64,000 nt of DNA, from positions 299,944 through 363,943 of IMG/VR virus record IMGVR_UViG_3300021963_000021; one strand, given 5' to 3'. A program made the position numbers and the translations under genes. Under the pieces are notes generated by a model that was not told where the DNA came from, did no database searches, and saw only the letters and a program-made list of their open reading frames with translations. Below are positions 9,918 through 47,150 of this stretch, piece by piece (the first letter of the stretch is position 1; each line of letters opens with the position of its first letter).

Positions 9918-10744
9918 CCTGCTAATACTTTTAGTAAGTTGCCTGAACGATCAATGCTTTCTCTTTTTGCGCGGCCTGCTTCTTCTGGTCCGCCTGCTGC
10001 TGGTTCTGCTGCGGCAAATGCGTCTTCACCTTCGTCGCCCATAGCAGCATCTGGATTCATAGCATCTGGTTCTGCTGGAGCACCTAGATCATCTGGAGCA
10101 CCCATGTCAGCTGCTGGATCTGGTGTTTCTGCTCCAAGCATTTCTTCCGGCTGTTCTTCGCCAGTTAGACCACGCACACCAGATGATAGTGTTTCACGTG
10201 TTTGCTTGAGTGTTTCTAATGCTGCTTGAATAGCTGGAGCCACTGCGCTTAAGAATGCCTTAGCTTGTTGTTGTCCCATTTCGTCACGGATGGTATCACC
10301 TAGTTCTAATAGCTGATCATTTTCCATGCCGGCTAGTTCTTCAATCCAGCGACCTACTCTATCTACCATCGTTTTGGCAGTTACCACTGCGCTGGCTTTA
10401 TCAGTGGCGCTTTCTTGAACTCTAGTTGTCATATCTTCTTCCTTTGTTGTTTCGTCGGTTTCCTGGATTTCTTCGCCACCCACAATGTTCTCACCGCGCT
10501 CAGAAATCTCTGCGTTGATCGCATCTAGCATCCATTGTGCTTTAGTGTAAGCATCATTCTCTACAGTTTCGTTAAAGCTAGAACTTTGCTTGTACTGATG
10601 TACTTGTGTGCGAAGTCTGTTTCTAGCGTCTTGTAATTGCTCTAGAGTGTATGATTCTAAGTTGAGCTTCTGCCCAAACGTTTTTTCAATGGTTTCGTTG
10701 ATTTTGCGAGAATCAACTTTCTTAAAAATGTCTGTTGTTTTCAT
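9914..10744 (-). CDS. acidic coiled-coil protein, possible prohead core/scaffold
   Basis: 276 aa, highly acidic; TAAATA box upstream near 10771. Confidence 0.55.
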   Translation of the reverse strand: MKTTDIFKKVDSRKINETIEKTFGQKLNLESYTLEQLQDARNRLRTQVHQYKQSSSFNETVENDAYTKAQWMLDAINAEISERGENIVGGEEIQETDETTKEEDMTTRVQESATDKASAVVTAKTMVDRVGRWIEELAGMENDQLLELGDTIRDEMGQQQAKAFLSAVAPAIQAALETLKQTRETLSSGVRGLTGEEQPEEMLGAETPDPAADMGAPDDLGAPAEPDAMNPDAAMGDEGEDAFAAAEPAAGGPEEAGRAKRESIDRSGNLLKVLAG

Positions 10745-20555: not shown

Positions 20556-21179
20556 TTAGTTGGCTTTTTCTAAATGTTCTGCTTTATCCCATCCTAGTAT
20601 ATGCTTGGCTTTCCAGTGGTTTTGTTCAAATCCTTTAAGATCCTGCCAGCTATCTCTGCGATTCCATATATCTTTGGCCACAGTCAACCAATCAGTGTGA
20701 CGAACAATGTAGTCAAAATTTAGCATATAATTTTTAAAATACTCGTAGCTGCGACTGTCAAACTCTACGTGTATAACTTCGTAGACTGTGCCATCGCTGG
20801 CAATAGCATTTAGATCGAAATCAAATCCCCATTTGGTTTTTATGTCTAACAGCTGACGTGCTAGGGGATGTGTTTCTTGTAGATCAGTGAGCTGATCTCG
20901 GGCTTGTCCGCCGTATTCACAACGGCAAAGAAACATGCTGTGGTCTAAGAAAAGTCCTAGATCGTTGCGTTCTAATTCAAACCAGGGTTCTTGCCAACAG
21001 CAGTGATTTAGTATGGGATGATCAATAGGATGATTCATGGCAGCATAGTACTTGCGTTCTATACCGTTGAGTTCAAATCCGTCCTTGTCGAAGTATTTGA
21101 AATCAGCTGCGTCAATATCTGTGATCGCTTTAAAACATCGAGGGTCGGACATAAGTGTTACATTATGTCTGCGGAACAT
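20556..21179 (-). CDS. conserved phage hypothetical protein
   Basis: 207 aa, FDKDGFEL...KWGFDF. Confidence 0.65.
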   Translation of the reverse strand: MFRRHNVTLMSDPRCFKAITDIDAADFKYFDKDGFELNGIERKYYAAMNHPIDHPILNHCCWQEPWFELERNDLGLFLDHSMFLCRCEYGGQARDQLTDLQETHPLARQLLDIKTKWGFDFDLNAIASDGTVYEVIHVEFDSRSYEYFKNYMLNFDYIVRHTDWLTVAKDIWNRRDSWQDLKGFEQNHWKAKHILGWDKAEHLEKAN

Positions 21180-21349
21180 TAGCGGTATTTCTCTGCTTGT
21201 TCTCTACAATCAAAACACTGGCATTCTACGCAATCGCAGTCGTCTGTCATACAGCTATGCCCGCAGTGTTTGCCGCACCTACAGGTACAGCCTAGATTCT
21301 TATAAGGTTTATATGAATCGTTGTTATCATTCTGTTCTATCTTTGTCAT
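21179..21349 (-). CDS. Cys-rich metallothionein-like mini-protein (not in ORF track)
   Basis: 56 aa MTKIEQNDNNDSYKPYKNLGCTCRCGKHCGHSCMTDDCDCVECQCFDCREQAEKYR; 10 Cys + 2 His; GGAG upstream; TAATG coupling to next gene. Confidence 0.7.
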   Translation of the reverse strand: MTKIEQNDNNDSYKPYKNLGCTCRCGKHCGHSCMTDDCDCVECQCFDCREQAEKYR

Positions 21350-21749
21350 CTATTGCTCCACCATGTACCCATGCTGTACAGCTACGTGTGCCAGCACATT
21401 TAAAATGTAAAAAATTACAGTATCCTAGATCTGATTTTTCAATAGTGGCCATAGCATCTACGTTTTTGTATTCGCCTTTGATACCTGCTTCGATACAGGC
21501 CCACATCTTGTCACTGACATCGAAAGCAGCGCAGTTGCTACACAGCATGGTCTTTGCTGTCTTTTCGTCTATCTTCCATTCTTTAGCGGCGTCTTTCCAA
21601 TAGCTGCCTGGCTCATCAGGATTGGCAGGTCCATAATGATATTCGTCTATAGCCTTTTGTCTATTCTTTAAGTTAACATCTATGTCGTGTGTGGCGATAG
21701 GACAGCCTTTGTTGGCTGCTTCTACTATGTTGATATACTTGCGATACAT
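21327..21749 (-). CDS. Cys-containing conserved phage protein
   Basis: CSNC ... CNFLHFKCAGTRSC. Confidence 0.7.
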   Translation of the reverse strand: MYRKYINIVEAANKGCPIATHDIDVNLKNRQKAIDEYHYGPANPDEPGSYWKDAAKEWKIDEKTAKTMLCSNCAAFDVSDKMWACIEAGIKGEYKNVDAMATIEKSDLGYCNFLHFKCAGTRSCTAWVHGGAIDDKDRTE

Positions 21750-38044: not shown

Positions 38045-38854
38045 ATGAAGCGTATTTTCACCCTTTCTATTCTCGCCGCCGCTGTTTTGGCAACGGGTTG
38101 TACTCGTATCGAAACTGGTGAAGTTGGCCTCCGTGTTGGTTTTGACAAGCAGGTTAAGAACGAGGAATTGCTGCCTGGTTCGTTTAATCAAACAATCATC
38201 GGTGATGTTCTTACATTCCCTGTGAAAGAAGTTGCTGTCAAAGTCGATGACATTACTCCACAAGCCAGCGACAACTCGACAATGAAAGACTTTGATTTGA
38301 CTGTTATCTATAACATCAATCCAAGTCAAATCGCTGAGATTTATAATACAAAGAATAAGAGTTTCCACGCTAATCACAATGGTGACACTTATTTGATGTA
38401 CAACTACATTTTCAATGCCGCACGTAACGCAACCTATAAAGCTGCTCGTAAGTACGAAGCGTTGAATATGGGTGATAACCGTGCTACCATGGAAGCTGAT
38501 ATCAAAGATGGCGTTACCAAAACGCTAGCCGATGAAAAGCTAGACGGTACTATCACTGTTACGCAAGTATTAATTCGTAGCATTATTCCAGCAGACAGTG
38601 TTGTTGCCAGTGCTAACGAGTTAGTTCGTGCTAAGAACGAAACCAAGCAGAAAGAAGCAGAAGTTCGTACTGCTCAACTTGAAGCACAGCGTATCCAAGC
38701 ATTGGCACAAAACGCTGGTGCTATCCAATACATGGACGCACAGGCTCGCATGAAGCAGGCAGATGCTGCTCTTAAGGTTGCCGAAGCTATCGCTAATTTC
38801 AAAGGTCAAACTTTGGTAATCGGTGCTGGTGCTAACGTAAACGTTGGCAAGTAA
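38045..38854 (+). CDS. SPFH/band 7 (prohibitin-like) lipoprotein
   Basis: Lipobox LATGC, IETGEVG, coiled-coil AEVRTAQLEAQR. Confidence 0.88.
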   Translation: MKRIFTLSILAAAVLATGCTRIETGEVGLRVGFDKQVKNEELLPGSFNQTIIGDVLTFPVKEVAVKVDDITPQASDNSTMKDFDLTVIYNINPSQIAEIYNTKNKSFHANHNGDTYLMYNYIFNAARNATYKAARKYEALNMGDNRATMEADIKDGVTKTLADEKLDGTITVTQVLIRSIIPADSVVASANELVRAKNETKQKEAEVRTAQLEAQRIQALAQNAGAIQYMDAQARMKQADAALKVAEAIANFKGQTLVIGAGANVNVGK

Positions 38855-38855
38855 T

Positions 38856-39305
38856 ATGAAGCTGTTCGGACGTAGTAGTGGATACTACCTATTCTGGACA
38901 GGCTTTGTATATTTCTGGGTGGGCATGTATCTTGCGTTCACGCAGGCTGCTCGCCCAGAAATTGCCACACTAGGATTTATACTGGCTCTTAGTGTACCGC
39001 TTTGGTGTCCGCCAGTTGCTCGTCATTTCAATATGGAGCCTTTGATGTTTGATTTTTTTAAGAAAAGAGATTATTCTAACGTAGTCAAGTTTCCAGAAGC
39101 TAAAGAAGTTCCCTACGTCGAACCTCCTAAGGAAAAAGAAAAACCTACCCATACGTACTATCGGTTAGGACTTACTGACAATAACCGTGTTAGCTTTACG
39201 ATGGGCTATAGTGAAATTACTATGAATGCCGCAGGTATTGACAGTATGATTAAACTGCTAGAAACCTATCGAGATATGTTAAACGAAGAGCATGATGGTG
39301 AGTAA
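38856..39305 (+). CDS. membrane protein
   Basis: Two N-terminal TM segments. Confidence 0.6.
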   Translation: MKLFGRSSGYYLFWTGFVYFWVGMYLAFTQAARPEIATLGFILALSVPLWCPPVARHFNMEPLMFDFFKKRDYSNVVKFPEAKEVPYVEPPKEKEKPTHTYYRLGLTDNNRVSFTMGYSEITMNAAGIDSMIKLLETYRDMLNEEHDGE

Positions 39306-39592
39306 TGCTACAACTAAGATTTGAACTAAAGAATCCTTGGTCTAAAGATCGTTTTAAGAATCTAGGCTGTGTCAGCGGACGCATTTCCAAGAATAAAGCG
39401 TGGGAATTAGAACACACATTCTATGATGGTCTCATAGCAGACTGTGAGTTTAAGTTCACGACCAAAGAAGATCATGCTGGTCTAAACATTATGATAGGTG
39501 TTCTAGGCTACGCTGTTCATTTCAGCATCTACGATACTAGACACTGGGACTACGAAAACAACTGTTGGCAAGTTTATGAAGATTTGCGCTAG
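39305..39592 (+). CDS. hypothetical protein whose TAG stop lies inside the tRNA
   Basis: 95 aa; ends GATTTGCGC-TAG, with GCGCTAG as the tRNA acceptor 5' strand. Confidence 0.7.
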   Translation: MLQLRFELKNPWSKDRFKNLGCVSGRISKNKAWELEHTFYDGLIADCEFKFTTKEDHAGLNIMIGVLGYAVHFSIYDTRHWDYENNCWQVYEDLR

Positions 39593-39660
39593 AAGCCTAA
39601 TGGTCAGGCACGGGTCTCTAAAGCCCAGGATAGCAGGTTCGATTCCTGTCTAGCGCACCA
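39586..39660 (+). tRNA. amber suppressor tRNA (anticodon CUA)
   Basis: Acceptor GCGCTAG/CTAGCGC + ACCA; D-arm GCCT/AGGC; anticodon arm GGGT-CTCTAAA-GCCC (CTA at 39618-39620); T-arm GCAGG-TTCGATT-CCTGT. Confidence 0.85.
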
Positions 39661-42153: not shown

Positions 42154-42192
42154 GCAGCGGGTCTTGACAGGTCCGCTGCTTTCACTTATACT
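42154..42192 (+). promoter_or_regulatory. terminator hairpin whose loop is the -35 box of the next promoter
   Basis: GCAGCGGGTC-TTGACA-GGTCCGCTGC then TTT; -10 TATACT at 42187-42192. Confidence 0.7.
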
Positions 42193-42226: not shown

Positions 42227-43294
42227 ATGACTTACTTTCTTAAAATGGGCACCACTTTCCGTGTCAGCACCAAAGAAGCTCTTGACCTACATGAGCAACT
42301 GCCTGCTGGCAACTACGTGGTTAAGAAAGACGAAATGACTGGACAACTGTTCTTGGAACAGATTGACAAGTTCGAGTTCAAAGGCAAGATCTACGGCGAT
42401 GCTAATCGTCGTGCTGAACGTATCCTTAACACATTTATGGATCGAGATAACAGCACTGGCGTTATGCTCAACGGTGAGAAAGGTTCAGGCAAGACTCTGT
42501 TGGCTAAGACGCTGAGTATCAAAGGCTACGACATGGGCATTCCTACTATTGTTATCAATGCTCCTTGGTGTGGTGACAAGTTCAATGCGTTCATTCAAAT
42601 GATTGAACAGCCTGTGATTATCATCTTTGACGAGTTTGAAAAGGTCTACGATGAGCAGGAACAGGAACAGATGCTGACATTGTTGGATGGTGTTTACCCT
42701 TCAAAGAAAATGTTTGTATTAACCTGTAACGACAAATGGCGTGTAAACAGCCATATGCGTAATCGTCCTGGTCGTATCTTTTACTCACTGGAGTACAAGG
42801 GTCTTGAAGAAGACTTTATTCGTGAGTACTGCGAAGACAATCTCAATGCTAAAGAGCACATCGAAAAGATCGTGGGCATCGCTGGCACGTTTGATCAGTT
42901 CAACTTCGACATGCTGAAAGCCATGGTCGAAGAAATGAATCGATACAACGAGACTCCGCAAGAAGTCATGATCATGATCAATGCTCGTCCTGAGTACAGC
43001 AACACCAGCCGTTACGCTGTCAAGTTGGTGCGCAATGGTGAAGAGCAGGACATCGAGTTCCGCGAGTGGGAAGGCAATCCTTTGACCAAACACATTTCTA
43101 TCGACTACAAGGTCGTGGAAAACAAAGGTACAGAGGAAGAAGAATGGGACTGGAACAATGTTCGATTCACTCCTGCGGATCTCAAGAAGATCGACGATGC
43201 TGGACAGAAGTTTGTGTTTGCCAACGCAGATGGGTCACAACTGGTGCTTCAGAAAGCCAAAGAGAAAGAATACCGTTACTGGGACGCTTTCTAA
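42227..43294 (+). CDS. AAA+ ATPase
   Basis: GEKGSGKT, IIFDEFEK, RNRPGR; start MTYFLK at 42227 after RBS GAAAG. Confidence 0.9.
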   Translation: MTYFLKMGTTFRVSTKEALDLHEQLPAGNYVVKKDEMTGQLFLEQIDKFEFKGKIYGDANRRAERILNTFMDRDNSTGVMLNGEKGSGKTLLAKTLSIKGYDMGIPTIVINAPWCGDKFNAFIQMIEQPVIIIFDEFEKVYDEQEQEQMLTLLDGVYPSKKMFVLTCNDKWRVNSHMRNRPGRIFYSLEYKGLEEDFIREYCEDNLNAKEHIEKIVGIAGTFDQFNFDMLKAMVEEMNRYNETPQEVMIMINARPEYSNTSRYAVKLVRNGEEQDIEFREWEGNPLTKHISIDYKVVENKGTEEEEWDWNNVRFTPADLKKIDDAGQKFVFANADGSQLVLQKAKEKEYRYWDAF

Positions 43295-43528: not shown

Positions 43529-44203
43529 TTAATTTTTCTTTCTTATCTCTGTTCGGTAATACTGTTTAGCAGTAAGAATAACAGCACCAACAAATGGTAA
43601 TATCTTTTCTACAAAATCATGTAGTGGGTCATTCCATTTGTCAATAAAAGGTTCGTGTACTATCATATTGCCTGCCACATAGTATAAAACAAAAGCACCA
43701 ATGTAAATTGTGCTAGGATATTTATCAAGTATGTTAGCGACTAACGTGCTACCAAACAAGATGATAGGTACACTAATTAGTAGTCCAGCGATGATTAAAA
43801 TCCAATTACCACTTGCGGCACCTGCGATTGCTAGTGCGTTATCTAAGCCCATGACAGCATCTGCCATTACGATTGTGCCCATTGCTCCCCAGAATGTTGT
43901 AGCAGCTCTGACATTACTATGATCGTTGTTGTTAGAAGTTAACTTCCAAGCGATGTAGATCAACGCAAGTCCGCCGACTAGTCTTAGCCCAGGAATCATT
44001 AGCAAATATGTAAGAGCCGCAACACAGGCAAAGCGAACACCTACAGCACCAAAGGTACCCCAAAGCATAGCTCGTTTACGTAGGGGTTCTGGTAGTTGTT
44101 TAGACGCCATTGCTATAACCAGTGCGTTTTCGCCTCCTAGTACAACGTCTATTAAGATGATGGCTATTAAAGCCCATAAGAATTGAAGTGAGAGAATTTC
44201 CAT
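43529..44203 (-). CDS. TerC/YjbE family membrane transporter (putative Mn2+ efflux)
   Basis: IDVVLGGENALVIA, ADAVMGLDNALAIAGAA, multiple TM helices. Confidence 0.92.
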   Translation of the reverse strand: MEILSLQFLWALIAIILIDVVLGGENALVIAMASKQLPEPLRKRAMLWGTFGAVGVRFACVAALTYLLMIPGLRLVGGLALIYIAWKLTSNNNDHSNVRAATTFWGAMGTIVMADAVMGLDNALAIAGAASGNWILIIAGLLISVPIILFGSTLVANILDKYPSTIYIGAFVLYYVAGNMIVHEPFIDKWNDPLHDFVEKILPFVGAVILTAKQYYRTEIRKKN

Positions 44204-44220: not shown

Positions 44221-44306
44221 ATGGTCTCGTCTCTTTGTCTACACACCGGGCTTGCGCCGTGATGACGATGTATAAAACCTTTTCAGGTTGACTACTCCCC
44301 AGGAAA
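44221..44306 (-). ncRNA. yybP-ykoY manganese riboswitch
   Basis: Minus strand TGGGGAGTAGTC...ATCGTCATCACGG-CGCAAG-CCCGGT...GACGAGACCA matches the GGGGAGUAG/CGUCA/CGGU/CRAGACC landmarks; sits between TATAAATA and the TerC RBS. Confidence 0.82.
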
Positions 44307-44349
44307 TATTTATAATAAGTAACATAGACATTAACAAAAGGAGATTAAC

Positions 44350-44928
44350 ATGTCAAAATAGATTGAATATGCTTGTAAGGACATAGTGTTTCACTTTAAC
44401 AAGAAGCACTTAGAAGATCAGACCATTCCCATGTGGGTCTTAAAATTCCATGGCGAAACCCTGTATGTAAATCACGTTGATTGTACTGTTGCTTGGTCAA
44501 CAAAAGAAACGCCTGATAACACACATACCAAAGGCAGCATCAAAGTCAAAGACGTACTGCTACGTATCAATGATGCCAACGAAGCCCAAATATCTCAATT
44601 AACACTGGTAGACAAGTTTAGGTTACGAAACCAAAAGCTGGGTATCACACGAGTGATGTTTAGCCCTAATGTCGCATTCCATAAAGCTCTACAGAACAAC
44701 GAGTTCAAGCATGGTCCGTTGAAACACATCCGTGGTGCTTGTGCCAGTTCGTTCGTGATCACTGATCTCACTGTGAAATCAGAAGTCACTATGGCCCTGT
44801 TAAAGTACAGCAACCAATTTAGGATTGTACAGCCCAACGAAACTTATTATCAGCAGTATGACAATGTCAAGGGCGAGAACCTACATGTGGATTATGGACA
44901 TCCTAGCACACCTTTTGAGTACAGTTAA
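44350..44928 (+). CDS. conserved phage protein with in-frame TAG at codon 4 (MSK*IEYACKDIVFHFNKKH...)
   Basis: RBS AAAAGGAG 7 nt before ATG 44350; TAG 44359-44361; same frame as ORF-track GTG 44386, which has no comparable RBS. Confidence 0.7.
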
Positions 44929-44991
44929 CTTGACAGTTTGATAATATGAGCATATAATTAAACATCGTAACAAATCTTTGAAAGGTACATC

Positions 44992-46116: not shown

Positions 46117-46348
46117 AGCATTCTGTAAAGACCTATTGTATGCGGGCATAACTGAGCTGATGGAAAACCGCAGATACTACTATACCAGCACTGTGGGTGT
46201 CAACTACAGCCATTGGACCGAAGAAGGCAAACAAGCAGTCAATGAATTGTTGGAGTTGATGACGCCTAAGATACAACAAGCACAGCACAACGAACTAGAT
46301 CGTCGTGCCAAAGATATGGTTATGAAAGAACTTAAGAAATCCAGTTAG
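46109..46348 (+). CDS. hypothetical protein
   Basis: Start MDKAF at 46109; ends TAG. Confidence 0.6.
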   Translation: MDKAFCKDLLYAGITELMENRRYYYTSTVGVNYSHWTEEGKQAVNELLELMTPKIQQAQHNELDRRAKDMVMKELKKSS

Positions 46349-46908
46349 AACCAGTTTGTCACAGCCTGTTTGGCTGATTCCTGTACAGCCCAATCCCACA
46401 TGTTTTCAGGGTCTGTTTCGTAGACAAAGTCTATGCTGGGCTGTGACAGTGTCAGCCAACTGTGACTGGGCTTCCAAGGACCTTCCCCTGATAGCTCGCC
46501 TGTGAGCTGCCCTGGTGCCCATCCAGCATGTCCAAAGTAGGCCTGCCAGTATTCGGGCTGTTCACCAGTCATCATGTATTCAAACATCTTGACATCTGAA
46601 GTCAAACCCAAACGTCCGTCAATGACCTGTGTTTTGTTGGTCTGCCAGTCTAGACTGTGTAGTAGGAACACCACGTGAGGCTGTACAGGTCCACCCCAAT
46701 AGAGCTGATGCTCTGCGATGTTGTCAGTCATGCCATCTACTAGACTGCCCACACAGTGTTCTGAGGGTCTGTTTAGCACTATGCCCATGCTGCCCTGATT
46801 GTCACTGTGATCTGTGAGCATGACCACAGTCTTGTGAAATCTAGTGTCTTTGTTAGTTGGGGGTGCGATCAAACAATCGCCAGGTTTGAGTTGTTGTGTT
46901 TTAATCAT
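46345..46908 (-). CDS. YqgE/AlgH (DUF179) family protein
   Basis: RFHKTVVM, GSMGIVLNRP, WGGPV, GHAGWAPGQL. Confidence 0.9.
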   Translation of the reverse strand: MIKTQQLKPGDCLIAPPTNKDTRFHKTVVMLTDHSDNQGSMGIVLNRPSEHCVGSLVDGMTDNIAEHQLYWGGPVQPHVVFLLHSLDWQTNKTQVIDGRLGLTSDVKMFEYMMTGEQPEYWQAYFGHAGWAPGQLTGELSGEGPWKPSHSWLTLSQPSIDFVYETDPENMWDWAVQESAKQAVTNWF

Positions 46909-47150
46909 TAAGACCAATCTGGTAGGGGACCACCATACTTTTTGCCCTTGATTCGCTTGCCGCGAACCTTGATGCGATCACTGCCGATCTTGTGACTCTT
47001 GCCACCCTCACGACTGCGATAGCCCTGACTCTTACAGCTAGCTAGGTTACTGGCACCCAGAGCTGAGTCAGGCTTGCCCGAAGTGCACAGAGCACGACTG
47101 GCCTTTTCTTCATCTACTGTGAGATCTTGTATGACTTCTGATATACGCAT
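46908..47150 (-). CDS. basic hypothetical late protein
   Basis: MRISEVI start; TAAATA upstream. Confidence 0.65.
   Translation of the reverse strand: MRISEVIQDLTVDEEKASRALCTSGKPDSALGASNLASCKSQGYRSREGGKSHKIGSDRIKVRGKRIKGKKYGGPLPDWS

What the first reader, a model, noticed from the sequence alone, without database searches (positions are those of the whole stretch)
44338..44928. Candidate amber-gated gene: strong RBS + ATG with in-frame TAG at codon 4
Seen: AAAAGGAG-attaac-ATG TCA AAA TAG ATT GAA TAT GCT TGT AAG GAC ATA GTG TTT CAC... The frame stays open for about 190 codons after the TAG. The ORF finder had to start at GTG 44386, which has no comparable RBS. Inference: full-length protein would need the CUA tRNA 4.8 kb away, making an early amber codon an on/off switch timed by tRNA expression. 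The N-terminal position would abort translation cheaply without the suppressor. Together with the tRNA this is the best candidate for an undescribed system here.
Basis: partly seen in the sequence, partly recalled or inferred. Interest (0 to 1): 0.85.

Follow-up and report, generated by a model that had tools for sequence, protein, structure and literature searches.

The report
Phage gene gated by early amber codon
A jumbo-phage gene carries a stop codon (TAG) at its fourth codon that is kept in essentially all relatives and sits next to a phage tRNA able to read TAG, so this stop is most likely a deliberate gate on making the full-length protein and suggests what the so-far targetless suppressor tRNAs of large phages are for.

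Summary
In detail: strong SD, ATG 44350, TAG 44359-61, then 188 open codons; tRNA-CUA at 39586-39660. The TAG cannot be an error. It is present in 136 of 137 related loci (102 distinct sequences, down to 56% identity), and that position never holds TAA, TGA or a sense codon. The eight codons after it vary only synonymously, so they are translated, and 20% of relatives have no other start before Met24. A conserved, covarying tRNA-CUA lies on the same strand in 36 of 38 loci with at least 10 kb upstream, often under 500 nt away. The "Gln" in database homologues is an artefact: those contigs were translated with TAG=Gln.

The same architecture recurs on an unrelated gene, PTH2 peptidyl-tRNA hydrolase, in other large phages. 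There the stop type follows the suppressor anticodon (Phosso TAG/tRNA-CUA, Atu_ph07 TGA/tRNA-UCA).

Caveats: an internal AAGGA-N4-GTG start co-evolves in about two-thirds of members, including the window, so the gate may choose between a long and a short isoform rather than on/off. The protein's function and the inserted amino acid are unknown. Nothing is experimentally shown.

Verdict: a real, apparently undescribed variant of suppressor-dependent recoding.

The parts
39586..39660 (+). Phage tRNA with anticodon CUA (amber suppressor type; ARAGORN labels it 'Pyl' by default). Canonical cloverleaf, short variable loop, encoded CCA.
   Evidence: ARAGORN. Rfam RF00005 57.2 bits. 62 distinct family members, 59 of them with G1-C2-G3...C70-G71-C72, A73 and CCA. 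13 of 18 stem pairs show compensatory changes and pairs 1-3 are invariant.
44288..44316 (+). Sigma-70-type promoter-like site TTGACT-17-TATAAT (11 of 12), 34 nt upstream of the ATG.
   Evidence: A site matching at least 10 of 12 lies within 130 nt upstream in 29 of 98 distinct relatives, against 19 of 306 random pieces. This is a consensus match only and function is not shown.
44336..44343 (+). Strong Shine-Dalgarno sequence AAAAGGAG, 6 nt before the ATG.
   Evidence: An SD-like motif lies within 18 nt of the ATG in 98 of 102 distinct relatives.
44350..44358 (+). Leader codons ATG TCA AAA (M-S-K). Length and sequence are not conserved among relatives: 1-4 sense codons after the ATG, 27 variants.
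44359..44361 (+). Conserved in-frame amber codon TAG (codon 4).
   Evidence: TAG in 136 of 137 loci and 102 distinct sequences; that position never holds TAA, TGA or a sense codon.
44362..44925 (+). Coding region after the TAG: 188 codons for a two-domain protein of unknown function. The conserved N-terminal ~80-residue domain carries the motifs FHFNKKH, PMWVLK, YVNH and TKGS.
   Evidence: 1354 homologues. Synonymous-only variation in codons 1-8. Coding potential +0.23 overall and +0.42 for the first 8 codons. AF2 mean pLDDT 82, with residues 2-13 forming the first strand. No Pfam, PHROG, NCBIfam or PDB match.
44377..44388 (+). Internal SD-like AAGGA (44377-81), spacer cata, and GTG (44386-88): a probable secondary start that does not depend on suppression and would give the 180-aa form.
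   Evidence: Both elements in 69, neither in 20, one only in 13 of 102 sequences. On phylogenetically independent pairs they change together (5.9 same / 0.1 opposite, median p 0.03; reverse direction 6.8 / 0.0, p 0.016). Control Lys/Val codon pairs show no co-variation.
44926..44928 (+). The gene's own terminator, TAA.
   Evidence: In relatives the terminator is TAA 62, TGA 38 and TAG 0 of 100.

Best explanation
The ORF 44350-44928 is a genuine, widespread gene of freshwater jumbo phages. The window is the last 64 kb of a 364 kb IMG/VR contig.

Ribosomes load at a strong SD/ATG, translate a 3-codon leader and meet UAG at codon 4. The full-length 192-residue protein is made only if the phage's own tRNA-CUA (39586-39660), charged by an as yet unidentified synthetase, decodes that UAG in competition with release factor 1. 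Otherwise translation stops after a tripeptide.

The nonsense codon is therefore a conserved translational gate. It couples synthesis of the long form to the presence and activity of the phage suppressor tRNA. In about two-thirds of family members, including this one, a weaker internal start (AAGGA-N4-GTG, 44377-44388) probably allows a shorter form lacking the first 12 residues, so there the gate may set the long/short ratio rather than act as a pure on/off switch.

Shown by sequence comparison: conservation and exclusivity of TAG, translation of the codons right after it, and linkage to a functional-looking tRNA-CUA. Inferred: actual read-through, its efficiency, and the purpose. My preferred purpose is licensing the protein only once the phage's tRNA/tmRNA translation module is working. 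The recurrence of the same gate on PTH2 peptidyl-tRNA hydrolases points to a link with translation quality control.
For: (1) TAG at the same place in 136 of 137 loci from IMG/VR, JGI/ENA metagenomes and a MAG: 102 distinct sequences, 56-100% protein identity. That position never holds TAA, TGA or a sense codon, although TAA is the commonest stop in these genomes.
(2) Codons 1-8 after the TAG show almost only synonymous variation (for example GAC 48 / GAT 48; GCT, GCA, GCG). The leader before the TAG varies freely in length and sequence.
(3) 20 of 102 sequences have no ATG, GTG or TTG in the 23 codons after the TAG. The V9 codon is GTT, GTC or GTA in 25 of 102.
(4) A tRNA-CUA lies on the same strand in 90 of 137 loci, and in 36 of 38 loci with at least 10 kb upstream. 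It is upstream in 89 of 90, at a median of 1.2 kb. Two contigs that seemed to lack it carry it elsewhere. In the reciprocal test, of 30 loci chosen by the tRNA alone and having at least 5 kb downstream, 21 contain the gene.
(5) The tRNA family shows covariation and invariant acceptor-end identity positions.
(6) The gene's own stop is never TAG (0 of 100).
(7) The architecture is specific: in 1.48 Mb of related DNA there are 128 TAG hits in this family, against 1 other TAG, 3 TAA and 6 TGA hits that look like noise.
(8) Independent parallel: PTH2 genes in Atu_ph07-like jumbo phages have TAG within codons 3-8 in 12 of 13 loci, 8 of them with a tRNA-CUA 2-5 kb upstream. Phosso has TAG plus tRNA-CUA. 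Atu_ph07 has TGA and its published sole suppressor is tRNA-UCA.
(9) The cultured Rhizobium phage RHph_I1_18 has a short homologue with TAG at codon 6 and a tRNA-CUA 12 nt downstream.
(10) The codon after the TAG is ATT in 98 of 102 sequences, against 45% for Ile codons elsewhere in the gene. A at +4 is the context reported in E. coli genetics to favour amber suppression (that last point is from my own knowledge, not tested here).
Against: There is no experimental evidence of read-through: no proteome, ribosome profiling or reporter data.

The co-evolving internal SD+GTG means a functional protein might be made without suppression in most members.

The strong ATT preference after the TAG would also fit initiation or re-initiation at AUU.

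The link to the tRNA is not exclusive. 9 of 30 tRNA-selected loci with at least 5 kb downstream lack the gene. An ungated relative (L277, direct ATG start) still sits 1.1 kb from a tmRNA and a tRNA-CUA, though of a different, G73 type.

In many loci the tRNA is probably co-transcribed with the gene, which weakens a simple timer model.

The amino acid inserted and the charging enzyme are unknown. The function of the protein is unknown, so the purpose of gating is inference.
Confidence: 0.75

Rival explanations
1. Leader mini-ORF with termination and re-initiation. The 3-codon ORF (ATG TCA AAA TAG) only serves to load ribosomes. These terminate at the TAG and restart at the adjacent AUU or at the internal GTG, independently of any suppressor, and the tRNA-CUA serves other purposes.
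For: The internal AAGGA-N4-GTG is present in 69 of 102 sequences and co-evolves as a unit. ATT is strongly enriched right after the TAG (98 of 102). An ungated relative keeps a nearby tRNA-CUA.
Against: It does not explain why the stop is always TAG and never TAA or TGA in 102 distinct sequences, when TAA is the usual stop. It does not explain the same-strand synteny with tRNA-CUA. It does not explain why residues between the TAG and the GTG are conserved as amino acids, nor the 20% of members that lack any canonical start before Met24. In the parallel PTH2 case the stop type switches with the suppressor anticodon. Ile after the TAG is also ATA or ATC in a few members.
Confidence: 0.12
2. Artefact or dead gene: a sequencing or assembly error, a minority variant, a pseudogene, or a laboratory-style amber mutant.
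For: A single in-frame stop near a start codon is what a random nonsense mutation or base-call error would look like in one sequence.
Against: The TAG is present in 136 independent assemblies from many samples and in 102 distinct sequences. There is purifying selection on both sides and intact coding potential.
Confidence: 0.01
3. Genome-wide TAG reassignment (a 'code 15' phage), in which TAG is simply a sense codon throughout the genome and this gene is one of many.
For: A tRNA-CUA is present. TAG is a rare terminator, 7 of 93 long ORFs. Some gene callers chose a TAG=Gln code for short contigs carrying this gene.
Against: The window is densely coding under the standard code. No other gene in the window or in 1.48 Mb of related loci shows the N-terminal TAG architecture. 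Same-frame ORF pairs split by TAG (27) are fewer than those split by TAA (91) or TGA (35), though at 18% of such pairs TAG is somewhat over-represented against its ~8% share of terminators. TAG does terminate some ORFs.
Confidence: 0.03
4. Minigene function. Before or without suppression, the strongly expressed 2-4-codon ORF acts like a lambda bar minigene. It would release short peptidyl-tRNAs and perturb host translation, and read-through later converts it into a normal gene. The recurrent gating of peptidyl-tRNA hydrolases would be part of that circuit.
For: Strong SD plus a 2-4-codon ORF, most often ATG AAA TAG. The same architecture recurs on PTH2 and PTH2-like hydrolases in at least three phage lineages. 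The domain gene lies about 1 kb downstream of the gated PTH2 in 12 Atu_ph07-like loci.
Against: This is purely inferential and no toxicity or drop-off data exist. It does not by itself explain the exclusivity of TAG. It is compatible with, rather than alternative to, the suppression gate.
Confidence: 0.08

Closest known systems
Stop-codon recoding in phages (TAG or TGA reassigned, with phage suppressor tRNAs; crAss-like, Lak and other gut phages: bioRxiv 10.1101/2021.08.26.457843, PMC9523058)
   Same: A phage-encoded suppressor tRNA reads an in-frame stop codon in phage genes while the host uses the standard code. Regulation of translation by the availability of the suppressor has been proposed.
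   Different: There, in-frame stops occur in many genes, mostly late, structural and lysis genes, and coding density collapses under the standard code. Here there is one gene per ~64 kb, a single codon always within the first few codons, in an otherwise standard-code genome and behind an early-type promoter. The tRNA is not Gln-like.
Suppressor tRNAs without known targets in standard-code jumbo phages (XacN1 PMC5852040; Atu_ph07 PMC6102473; RsoM2USA PMC8504454)
   Same: Large phages with big tRNA sets and one or two suppressor tRNAs (CUA or UCA).
   Different: Those papers found no target. XacN1's authors tested only read-through beyond annotated terminal ambers and state that they could not identify target genes. 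Here a specific target class is identified, N-terminal nonsense codons hidden by downstream-start gene calls, including Atu_ph07's own PTH2 gene.
Programmed stop-codon read-through (Q-beta A1 protein, retroviral gag-pol)
   Same: A stop codon is decoded as sense at a set frequency to give a second product.
   Different: Those stops end a complete protein and are misread by ordinary near-cognate cellular tRNAs at low frequency to add a C-terminal extension. Here the stop follows a 2-4-residue leader and is paired with a dedicated cognate tRNA encoded by the same genome.
prfB (release factor 2) autoregulation
   Same: An early in-frame stop codon acts as a sensor, with competition between termination and an alternative decoding event. 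An internal SD-like element lies nearby.
   Different: prfB uses a +1 frameshift and its product is the factor that reads the stop. Here the reading frame is unchanged and the product is not a release factor.
Lambda bar minigenes
   Same: Strong SD, ATG, one to a few codons, then a stop. There is a link to peptidyl-tRNA hydrolase biology.
   Different: bar minigenes are not followed by an in-frame conserved protein and have no suppressor partner.
Laboratory amber mutants with suppressor tRNAs, and engineered amber-gated expression
   Same: The logic is identical: a gene carrying an amber codon is expressed only where a suppressor tRNA is supplied.
   Different: This is a natural, conserved arrangement with gene and suppressor on the same genome.

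Membership tests
Bona fide tRNA (Rfam RF00005) | Scores above the family's gathering threshold and has a cloverleaf supported by covariation | tested here: met
   57.2 bits against a gathering score of 29. 13 of 18 pairs show compensatory changes in 45 sequences.
Amber suppressor tRNA | Anticodon CUA in a standard 7-nt anticodon loop | tested here: met
   Loop CUCUAAA or UUCUAAA in 61 of 62 distinct family members.
Amber suppressor tRNA | Is aminoacylated and decodes UAG in vivo | not testable with these tools
   Inferred only from conservation of the identity positions (G1-C72, C2-G71, G3-C70, A73) and from the paired conserved TAG.
supE-type tRNA-Gln suppressor / TAG=Gln (code 15) | Gln-type identity elements (weak 1-72 pair U1-A72, discriminator G73; from knowledge of E. 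coli GlnRS) | tested here: not met
   G1-C72 and A73 in 59 of 62 members. Gln is among the least similar isoacceptors.
Pyrrolysine system | Atypical tRNA-Pyl architecture and pylS/pylBCD genes | tested here: inconclusive
   The tRNA matches the general tRNA model over its full length and has an ordinary cloverleaf. Pfam on 13 neighbouring ORFs showed no Pyl genes. The other 300 kb of the genome could not be examined.
Genome-wide stop-codon-recoded phage (code 15 / code 4 type) | Many genes with in-frame recoded stops; low coding density under the standard code | tested here: not met
   93 long ORFs tile the window under code 11. Only this gene shows the architecture in the window and in 1.48 Mb of relatives.
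Genome-wide stop-codon-recoded phage (code 15 / code 4 type) | Phage-encoded suppressor tRNA cognate to the recoded stop | tested here: met
Programmed C-terminal read-through (Q-beta A1 type) | The stop terminates a complete functional protein and read-through adds an extension | tested here: not met
   Only 3 sense codons precede the TAG, and the leader is not conserved.
Programmed C-terminal read-through (Q-beta A1 type) | Stimulatory downstream RNA structure or context | tested here: inconclusive
   There is no convincing conserved structure within 87 nt (consensus -4.5 kcal/mol against -1.3 +/- 1.4 for shuffled columns, and far from the TAG). The 3' codon is strongly constrained to ATT.
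prfB-type frameshift autoregulation | The coding frame changes (+1) at the in-frame stop | tested here: not met
   The conserved protein continues in the 0 frame directly after the TAG.
PTH2 peptidyl-tRNA hydrolase (PF01981), for the window's protein | Sequence or profile similarity to PTH2 | tested here: not met
   No Pfam hit. hhalign A1 against A2 gives probability 0.06%. The relation to PTH2 is by gene neighbourhood and shared gating only.
Ribosomal protein uL10-like (lead from the ESM Atlas) | Profile or structural similarity to Ribosomal_L10 | tested here: not met
   Atlas scores of 0.78-0.83 are below its 0.9 guide value. No Pfam, PDB-sequence or Foldseek support.

The most novel reading that the evidence does not exclude
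Large phages that use the standard genetic code keep dedicated suppressor tRNAs in order to license a very small, specific set of genes through a nonsense codon placed within the first ~10 codons. Those genes are this FHFNKKH-domain protein and PTH2 or PTH2-like peptidyl-tRNA hydrolases. The device evolved more than once: with different suppressor tRNAs (an A73 type here, a Trp-like G73 type in Atu_ph07-like phages), with different stops (amber and opal), and in different gene families. It ties production of translation-quality-control factors to the state of the phage-remodelled translation apparatus. This would explain the so-far targetless suppressor tRNAs reported for jumbo phages.
Probability: 0.45. 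Interest if true: 0.9.

Novelty: new variant of a known kind. Interest (0 to 1): 0.8.

Why it matters
Suppressor tRNAs have been reported in several standard-code jumbo phages (XacN1, Atu_ph07, RsoM2USA) with no identified target. This result supplies a concrete and testable one. Look at the first codons of genes, where gene callers hide the stop by choosing a downstream start.

It also extends phage stop-codon recoding from genome-scale code change to a minimal form: one codon, one gene and one tRNA.

It exposes a systematic annotation error. More than 1300 database proteins of this family are either N-terminally truncated or carry an assumed Gln.

Finally, it names cultured systems in which the mechanism can be tested directly: Rhizobium phage RHph_I1_18, Sinorhizobium phage Phosso, Agrobacterium phage Atu_ph07 and Yersinia phage fHe-Yen9-04.

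Tried and rejected
(1) Megablast of the region against GenBank phages found no match.

(2) Gln at the TAG position in homologues turned out to be an artefact of TAG=Gln gene calling.

(3) Isoacceptor origin of the tRNA by similarity to 172 other phage tRNAs was not decisive; Thr, Leu, Arg and Phe scored highest.

(4) Function of the protein: Pfam, PHROGs, NCBIfam, a PDB profile search, and Foldseek against PDB and BFVD gave nothing beyond uncharacterised phage homologues. The ESM Atlas uL10 lead was not supported. hhalign against PTH2 was negative. A deep profile search with the N-domain found only 155 clusters, all small phage-type proteins plus weak hits to large repeat proteins that I did not follow.

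(5) The second architecture hit in the window, at 21037, is spurious by coding potential.

(6) Mid-gene TAG read-through candidates in related loci (L006, L042, L049, L050): Pfam gave no hits on either side, so they remain unresolved.

(7) A conserved RNA structure next to the TAG: none convincing.

(8) The first hhalign of the PTH2-like set was inflated by a shared sequence. Redone with disjoint sets it gives only E 4.4e-4 and 33% probability.

(9) Contigs for one ungated relative (P0135) could not be read because the file was too large.
Full report
**1. The observation**

- AAAAGGAG lies at 44336-44343, followed by six bases and ATG at 44350.
- The next codons are TCA, AAA and TAG (44359-44361).
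- After the TAG come ATT GAA TAT GCT TGT AAG GAC ATA GTG…, and the frame stays open for 188 codons to TAA at 44926-44928.
- The mechanical ORF list starts at GTG 44386.
- ARAGORN finds a tRNA with anticodon CTA at 39586-39660 on the same strand. Rfam scores it as a tRNA at 57.2 bits against a gathering score of 29.

The window is the last 64 kb of a 363,943-bp IMG/VR contig, so this is a jumbo phage (L001 at 100% identity). Under the standard code the window is tiled by 93 long ORFs that end in TAA 51, TGA 35 and TAG 7 times. This is not a globally recoded genome.

**2. The TAG is a conserved feature**

A search with the post-TAG translation found 1354 homologues in three length classes.

Fetching three of their contigs showed that the underlying codon is TAG. 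The gene callers had translated these short contigs with TAG=Gln, and the tool reports that the gene does not translate to the query. The ~180-aa and ~165-aa classes are calls that start at the Val9 or Met24 equivalents.

At the DNA level, all 52 IMG/VR loci have SD, ATG, one to a few codons, then TAG-ATT-GAA. I added 80 metagenome loci and 2 genome-bin contigs. In total 136 of 137 loci carry the TAG, in 102 distinct sequences, and that position never holds TAA, TGA or a sense codon. The one exception, L142, is a divergent N-domain-only relative on a 2.2-kb contig.

**3. The stretch after the TAG is translated**

- **Synonymous variation only.** In the 102 distinct sequences, the eight codons after the TAG vary almost only synonymously: GAA 94 / GAG 8; TAT / TAC; GCT / GCA / GCG; TGT / TGC; AAG / AAA; GAC 48 / GAT 48.
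- **The leader is free to vary.** The leader before the TAG has 27 variants that differ in length and sequence.
- **The GTG is not a conserved start.** The Val9 codon that ORF finders use as a start is GTT, GTC or GTA in 25 of 102 sequences. Twenty of 102 have no ATG, GTG or TTG anywhere in the 23 codons after the TAG.
- **Structure and coding potential agree.** In the AlphaFold model (mean pLDDT 82) residues 2-13 form the first β-strand. Coding potential of the first eight codons is positive.

So ribosomes must enter this stretch at or through the TAG.

**4. Linkage to the tRNA**

A tRNA-CUA is found on the same strand in 90 of 137 loci. Most loci without one have little upstream sequence. 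Among loci with at least 10 kb upstream it is present in 36 of 38. It lies upstream in 89 of 90 cases, at a median of 1.2 kb. It is within 500 nt in 34 loci and within 150 nt in 12.

Two contigs that seemed to lack it carry it elsewhere (L190 and L217).

In the reverse direction, I picked 80 IMG/VR loci only by a pattern for this tRNA type. Of these, 44 contain the gene, as do 21 of the 30 with at least 5 kb downstream of the tRNA.

The tRNA family has 62 distinct sequences.
- G1-C72, C2-G71 and G3-C70 are invariant.
- A73 is present in 59 of 62, and the CCA end is encoded.
- The anticodon loop is YUCUAAA.
- 13 of 18 stem pairs show compensatory changes.

These features fit a working tRNA with fixed identity elements. 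They are not those of tRNA-Gln, and similarity to other phage tRNAs does not settle its origin. From E. coli suppressor genetics (my own knowledge, not tested here), CUA suppressors with A73 are often charged with Lys or Gln. The inserted residue is unknown. It probably matters little, because the TAG sits in a variable tail and is shifted by one codon in L030, L064 and RHph_I1_18.

**5. Specificity and supporting details**

The architecture "SD-ATG, a few codons, stop, long open frame" occurs 128 times with TAG in this family. It otherwise occurs once with TAG, 3 times with TAA and 6 times with TGA, all looking like noise, in 1.48 Mb.

The only other hit in the window, at 21037, is antisense to real genes and has negative coding potential.

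The gene's own terminator is TAA 62, TGA 38 and never TAG.

The codon after the TAG is ATT in 98 of 102 sequences, although Ile elsewhere in the gene is ATT in only 45%. That is a 3′-context constraint. It fits the reported preference of amber suppression for A at +4 (my own knowledge), but it would also fit AUU initiation.

I found no convincing conserved RNA structure next to the TAG.

In the window the gene has its own promoter-like site, TTGACT-17-TATAAT, at 44288-44316. The next gene has a perfect consensus site.

**6.

The Lys6-Asp7 codons AAG GAC spell AAGGA, 4 nt before GTG 44386.
- Across the family, AAGGA and GTG occur together in 69 sequences, neither occurs in 20, and only one in 13.
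- On a tree built without these columns, each trait changes about 15 times.
- On phylogenetically independent pairs they change together: 5.9 pairs the same way against 0.1 opposite, median p 0.03. In the reverse direction it is 6.8 against 0.0, p 0.016.
- No control pair of other Lys(AAG) and Val(GTG) codons co-varies. G-ending codons are enriched at exactly these two positions.

Most members, the window included, therefore seem to maintain a second, weaker start. The gate may set the ratio of a long (192-aa) to a short (180-aa) form rather than switch the gene fully off.

**7. The same device on another gene**

Distant relatives of the N-terminal domain occur in cultured phages.

*Rhizobium phage RHph_I1_18.* This phage has an unannotated ~80-codon version with TAG at codon 6, followed 12 nt later by an annotated tRNA(cta).

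*Atu_ph07 and Phosso.* Here the domain is the C-terminal half of an uninterrupted protein. Two genes upstream lies a PTH2 peptidyl-tRNA hydrolase with the same N-terminal-stop architecture.
- Phosso has ATG AAG TAT TAG, and its annotated start truncates the Pfam domain.
- Atu_ph07 has ATG…TTT TGA at codon 7, with no canonical start before the annotated one.
- The Atu_ph07 paper reports a single suppressor tRNA with anticodon UCA (PMC6102473).
- I predicted a tRNA-CUA in Phosso and found it 4.4 kb upstream of the PTH2 gene, annotated only as "tRNA-OTHER".

*Uncultured relatives.* In 13 IMG/VR PTH2 loci of this phage group, 12 have TAG within codons 3-8, and 8 of these show a tRNA-CUA 2-5 kb upstream. 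The thirteenth locus is Atu_ph07 itself. These suppressors have G73 and a Trp-like loop, so they are a different tRNA family from the window's.

*PTH2-like family.* A distant PTH2-like family also carries an N-terminal TAG. Its Pfam hits are sub-threshold, and hhalign with disjoint sets gives E 4.4e-4 and 33% probability. It occurs in Yersinia phage fHe-Yen9-04, which has a tRNA-Sup-CTA, and in four loci selected by the tRNA alone.

*Synteny.* In the Atu_ph07-like loci the domain gene lies about 1 kb downstream of the gated PTH2. In two of them it is joined by 4-nt overlaps.

**8. Limits of the link**

Some more divergent relatives start directly with ATG where the TAG would be.
- L275 has no tRNA in the 6.7 kb upstream.
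- L277 and L278 keep a tmRNA and a tRNA-CUA of a different, G73 type 1.1 kb upstream, although the gene there is ungated. No other N-terminal TAG gene was seen within 10 kb.

The tRNA is therefore not tied exclusively to this codon.

**9. What it is like, and what is new**

The closest known concept is stop-codon recoding in gut phages, in which suppressor tRNAs read many in-frame stops, mainly in late and lysis genes. Here there is one codon in one gene, within the first few codons, in a standard-code genome.

Papers on XacN1, Atu_ph07 and RsoM2USA report suppressor tRNAs without identified targets. XacN1's authors state this explicitly, having tested only terminal ambers.

Four full-text searches found no description of single-gene N-terminal nonsense gating in phages.

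**10. Function**

The protein has no match in Pfam, PHROGs, NCBIfam, PDB sequences or PDB folds. The best viral fold hit is an uncharacterised homologue, and the ESM Atlas uL10 lead is unsupported.

Its neighbourhood often includes a phage tmRNA (32 of 137 loci) and tRNA arrays. Its domain is syntenic with PTH2 in another lineage. A role connected with translation is therefore plausible but not shown.

**11. Verdict**

The finding is real and its core interpretation holds on comparative evidence. The "timer / on-off" detail is unproven and is probably too simple. Everything here rests on sequence comparison, and read-through itself still has to be demonstrated.

Noticed in passing
L058:1884-2378 (Phosso), L057:1932-2381 (Atu_ph07), L143-L155, L274:5984-6059: PTH2 peptidyl-tRNA hydrolase genes of Atu_ph07-like jumbo phages carry an in-frame stop within codons 3-8: TAG in 12 of 13 loci, TGA in Atu_ph07. 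The stop type matches the phage's suppressor tRNA (CUA in Phosso and relatives, UCA published for Atu_ph07). GenBank annotations start these genes downstream and truncate the Pfam domain.
   Followed up: yes
L056:2977-3225 and L056:3237-3314 (Rhizobium phage RHph_I1_18, MN988519): An unannotated ~80-codon homologue of the window protein's N-domain has TAG at codon 6. It is followed 12 nt later by the annotated tRNA(cta).
   Followed up: yes
L059:16585-16923 (Yersinia phage fHe-Yen9-04); L167:4548; L181:9283; L183:2864; L199:2483: A distant PTH2-like family (motif RxD(L/I)..Q..Q..HA) has TAG after 2-8 codons, in phages that carry a tRNA-CUA. L183 has no canonical start anywhere in its 106 codons. 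The Yersinia copy lies in an unannotated gap.
   Followed up: partly
L183:3193-3798; L165:7206-7901 (- strand): Two further genes next to this tRNA type have an early TAG: an unknown 198-codon ORF (ATG ACG TAG) and an HNH/NUMOD3 homing endonuclease with TAG at codon 10.
   Followed up: no
Database proteins P0001-P0120: Systematic annotation problem. Family members are stored as truncated calls (~180 or ~165 aa), or as ~191-aa proteins with an assumed Gln where the DNA has TAG.
   Followed up: yes
32 of 137 related loci, e.g. L004:11449-11889, L025:6666-7065, L032:10540-10955: Phage-encoded tmRNA genes lie close to the gene and the tRNA-CUA, and large tRNA arrays often follow a few kb downstream. 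ARAGORN found no tmRNA in the window itself.
   Followed up: partly
window 39305-39592 / 39586-39660: The upstream ORF ends in a TAG (39590-39592) that lies inside the acceptor stem of the tRNA-CUA, so ORF and tRNA overlap by 7 nt. Many family tRNAs begin GCGCTAG.
   Followed up: no
window 44930-44958, 42164-42192: Consensus or near-consensus sigma-70-type promoter sites (12 of 12 and 11 of 12) precede the neighbouring genes, suggesting a block of early-type single-gene units.
   Followed up: no
window 43529-44203 (-), 42227-43294 (+), 38045-38854 (+), 46345-46917 (-): Neighbouring genes encode a TerC-family membrane protein, an AAA ATPase (PHROG 2376), an SPFH/Band-7 protein and an AlgH-like (DUF179) protein.
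   Followed up: partly
L274:3972-7143 (Phosso record 169971-173142): Phosso's tRNA-CUA is flanked by genes annotated as cysteinyl-tRNA synthetase and a short 'serine-tRNA synthetase'. A phage-encoded charging enzyme for the suppressor is conceivable.
   Followed up: no
L060:19995-20072 (Sinorhizobium phage phiN3): The annotated 'tRNA-TERM' has anticodon UUA, an ochre-type suppressor. No target was looked for beyond a quick scan.
   Followed up: no
L277:7585-8873 and 10001-10597; L275:6688-7293: Natural ungated relatives start with ATG where the TAG would be. L277 still has a tmRNA and a tRNA-CUA of a different, G73 type 1.1 kb upstream. L275 has no tRNA nearby.
   Followed up: partly
L006:3207-3209 (-), L050:17154-17156 (-), L049:14744-14746 (-), L042:8171-8173 (-): Same-frame ORF pairs are separated by a single TAG with no nearby restart codon. 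These are possible mid-gene or C-terminal read-through clients of the suppressor. Pfam gave no hits on either side.
   Followed up: partly
P0244, P0247, P0257, P0258: Residues ~29-53 of the domain profile match repeatedly (4-10 stretches) in very large proteins of 1171-2640 aa, hinting at a repeat-like β-hairpin unit.
   Followed up: no
window 21037-21603 (+): A second 'SD-ATG-3 codons-TAG-long ORF' pattern. It is antisense to two real minus-strand genes and has negative coding potential, so it is spurious.
   Followed up: yes
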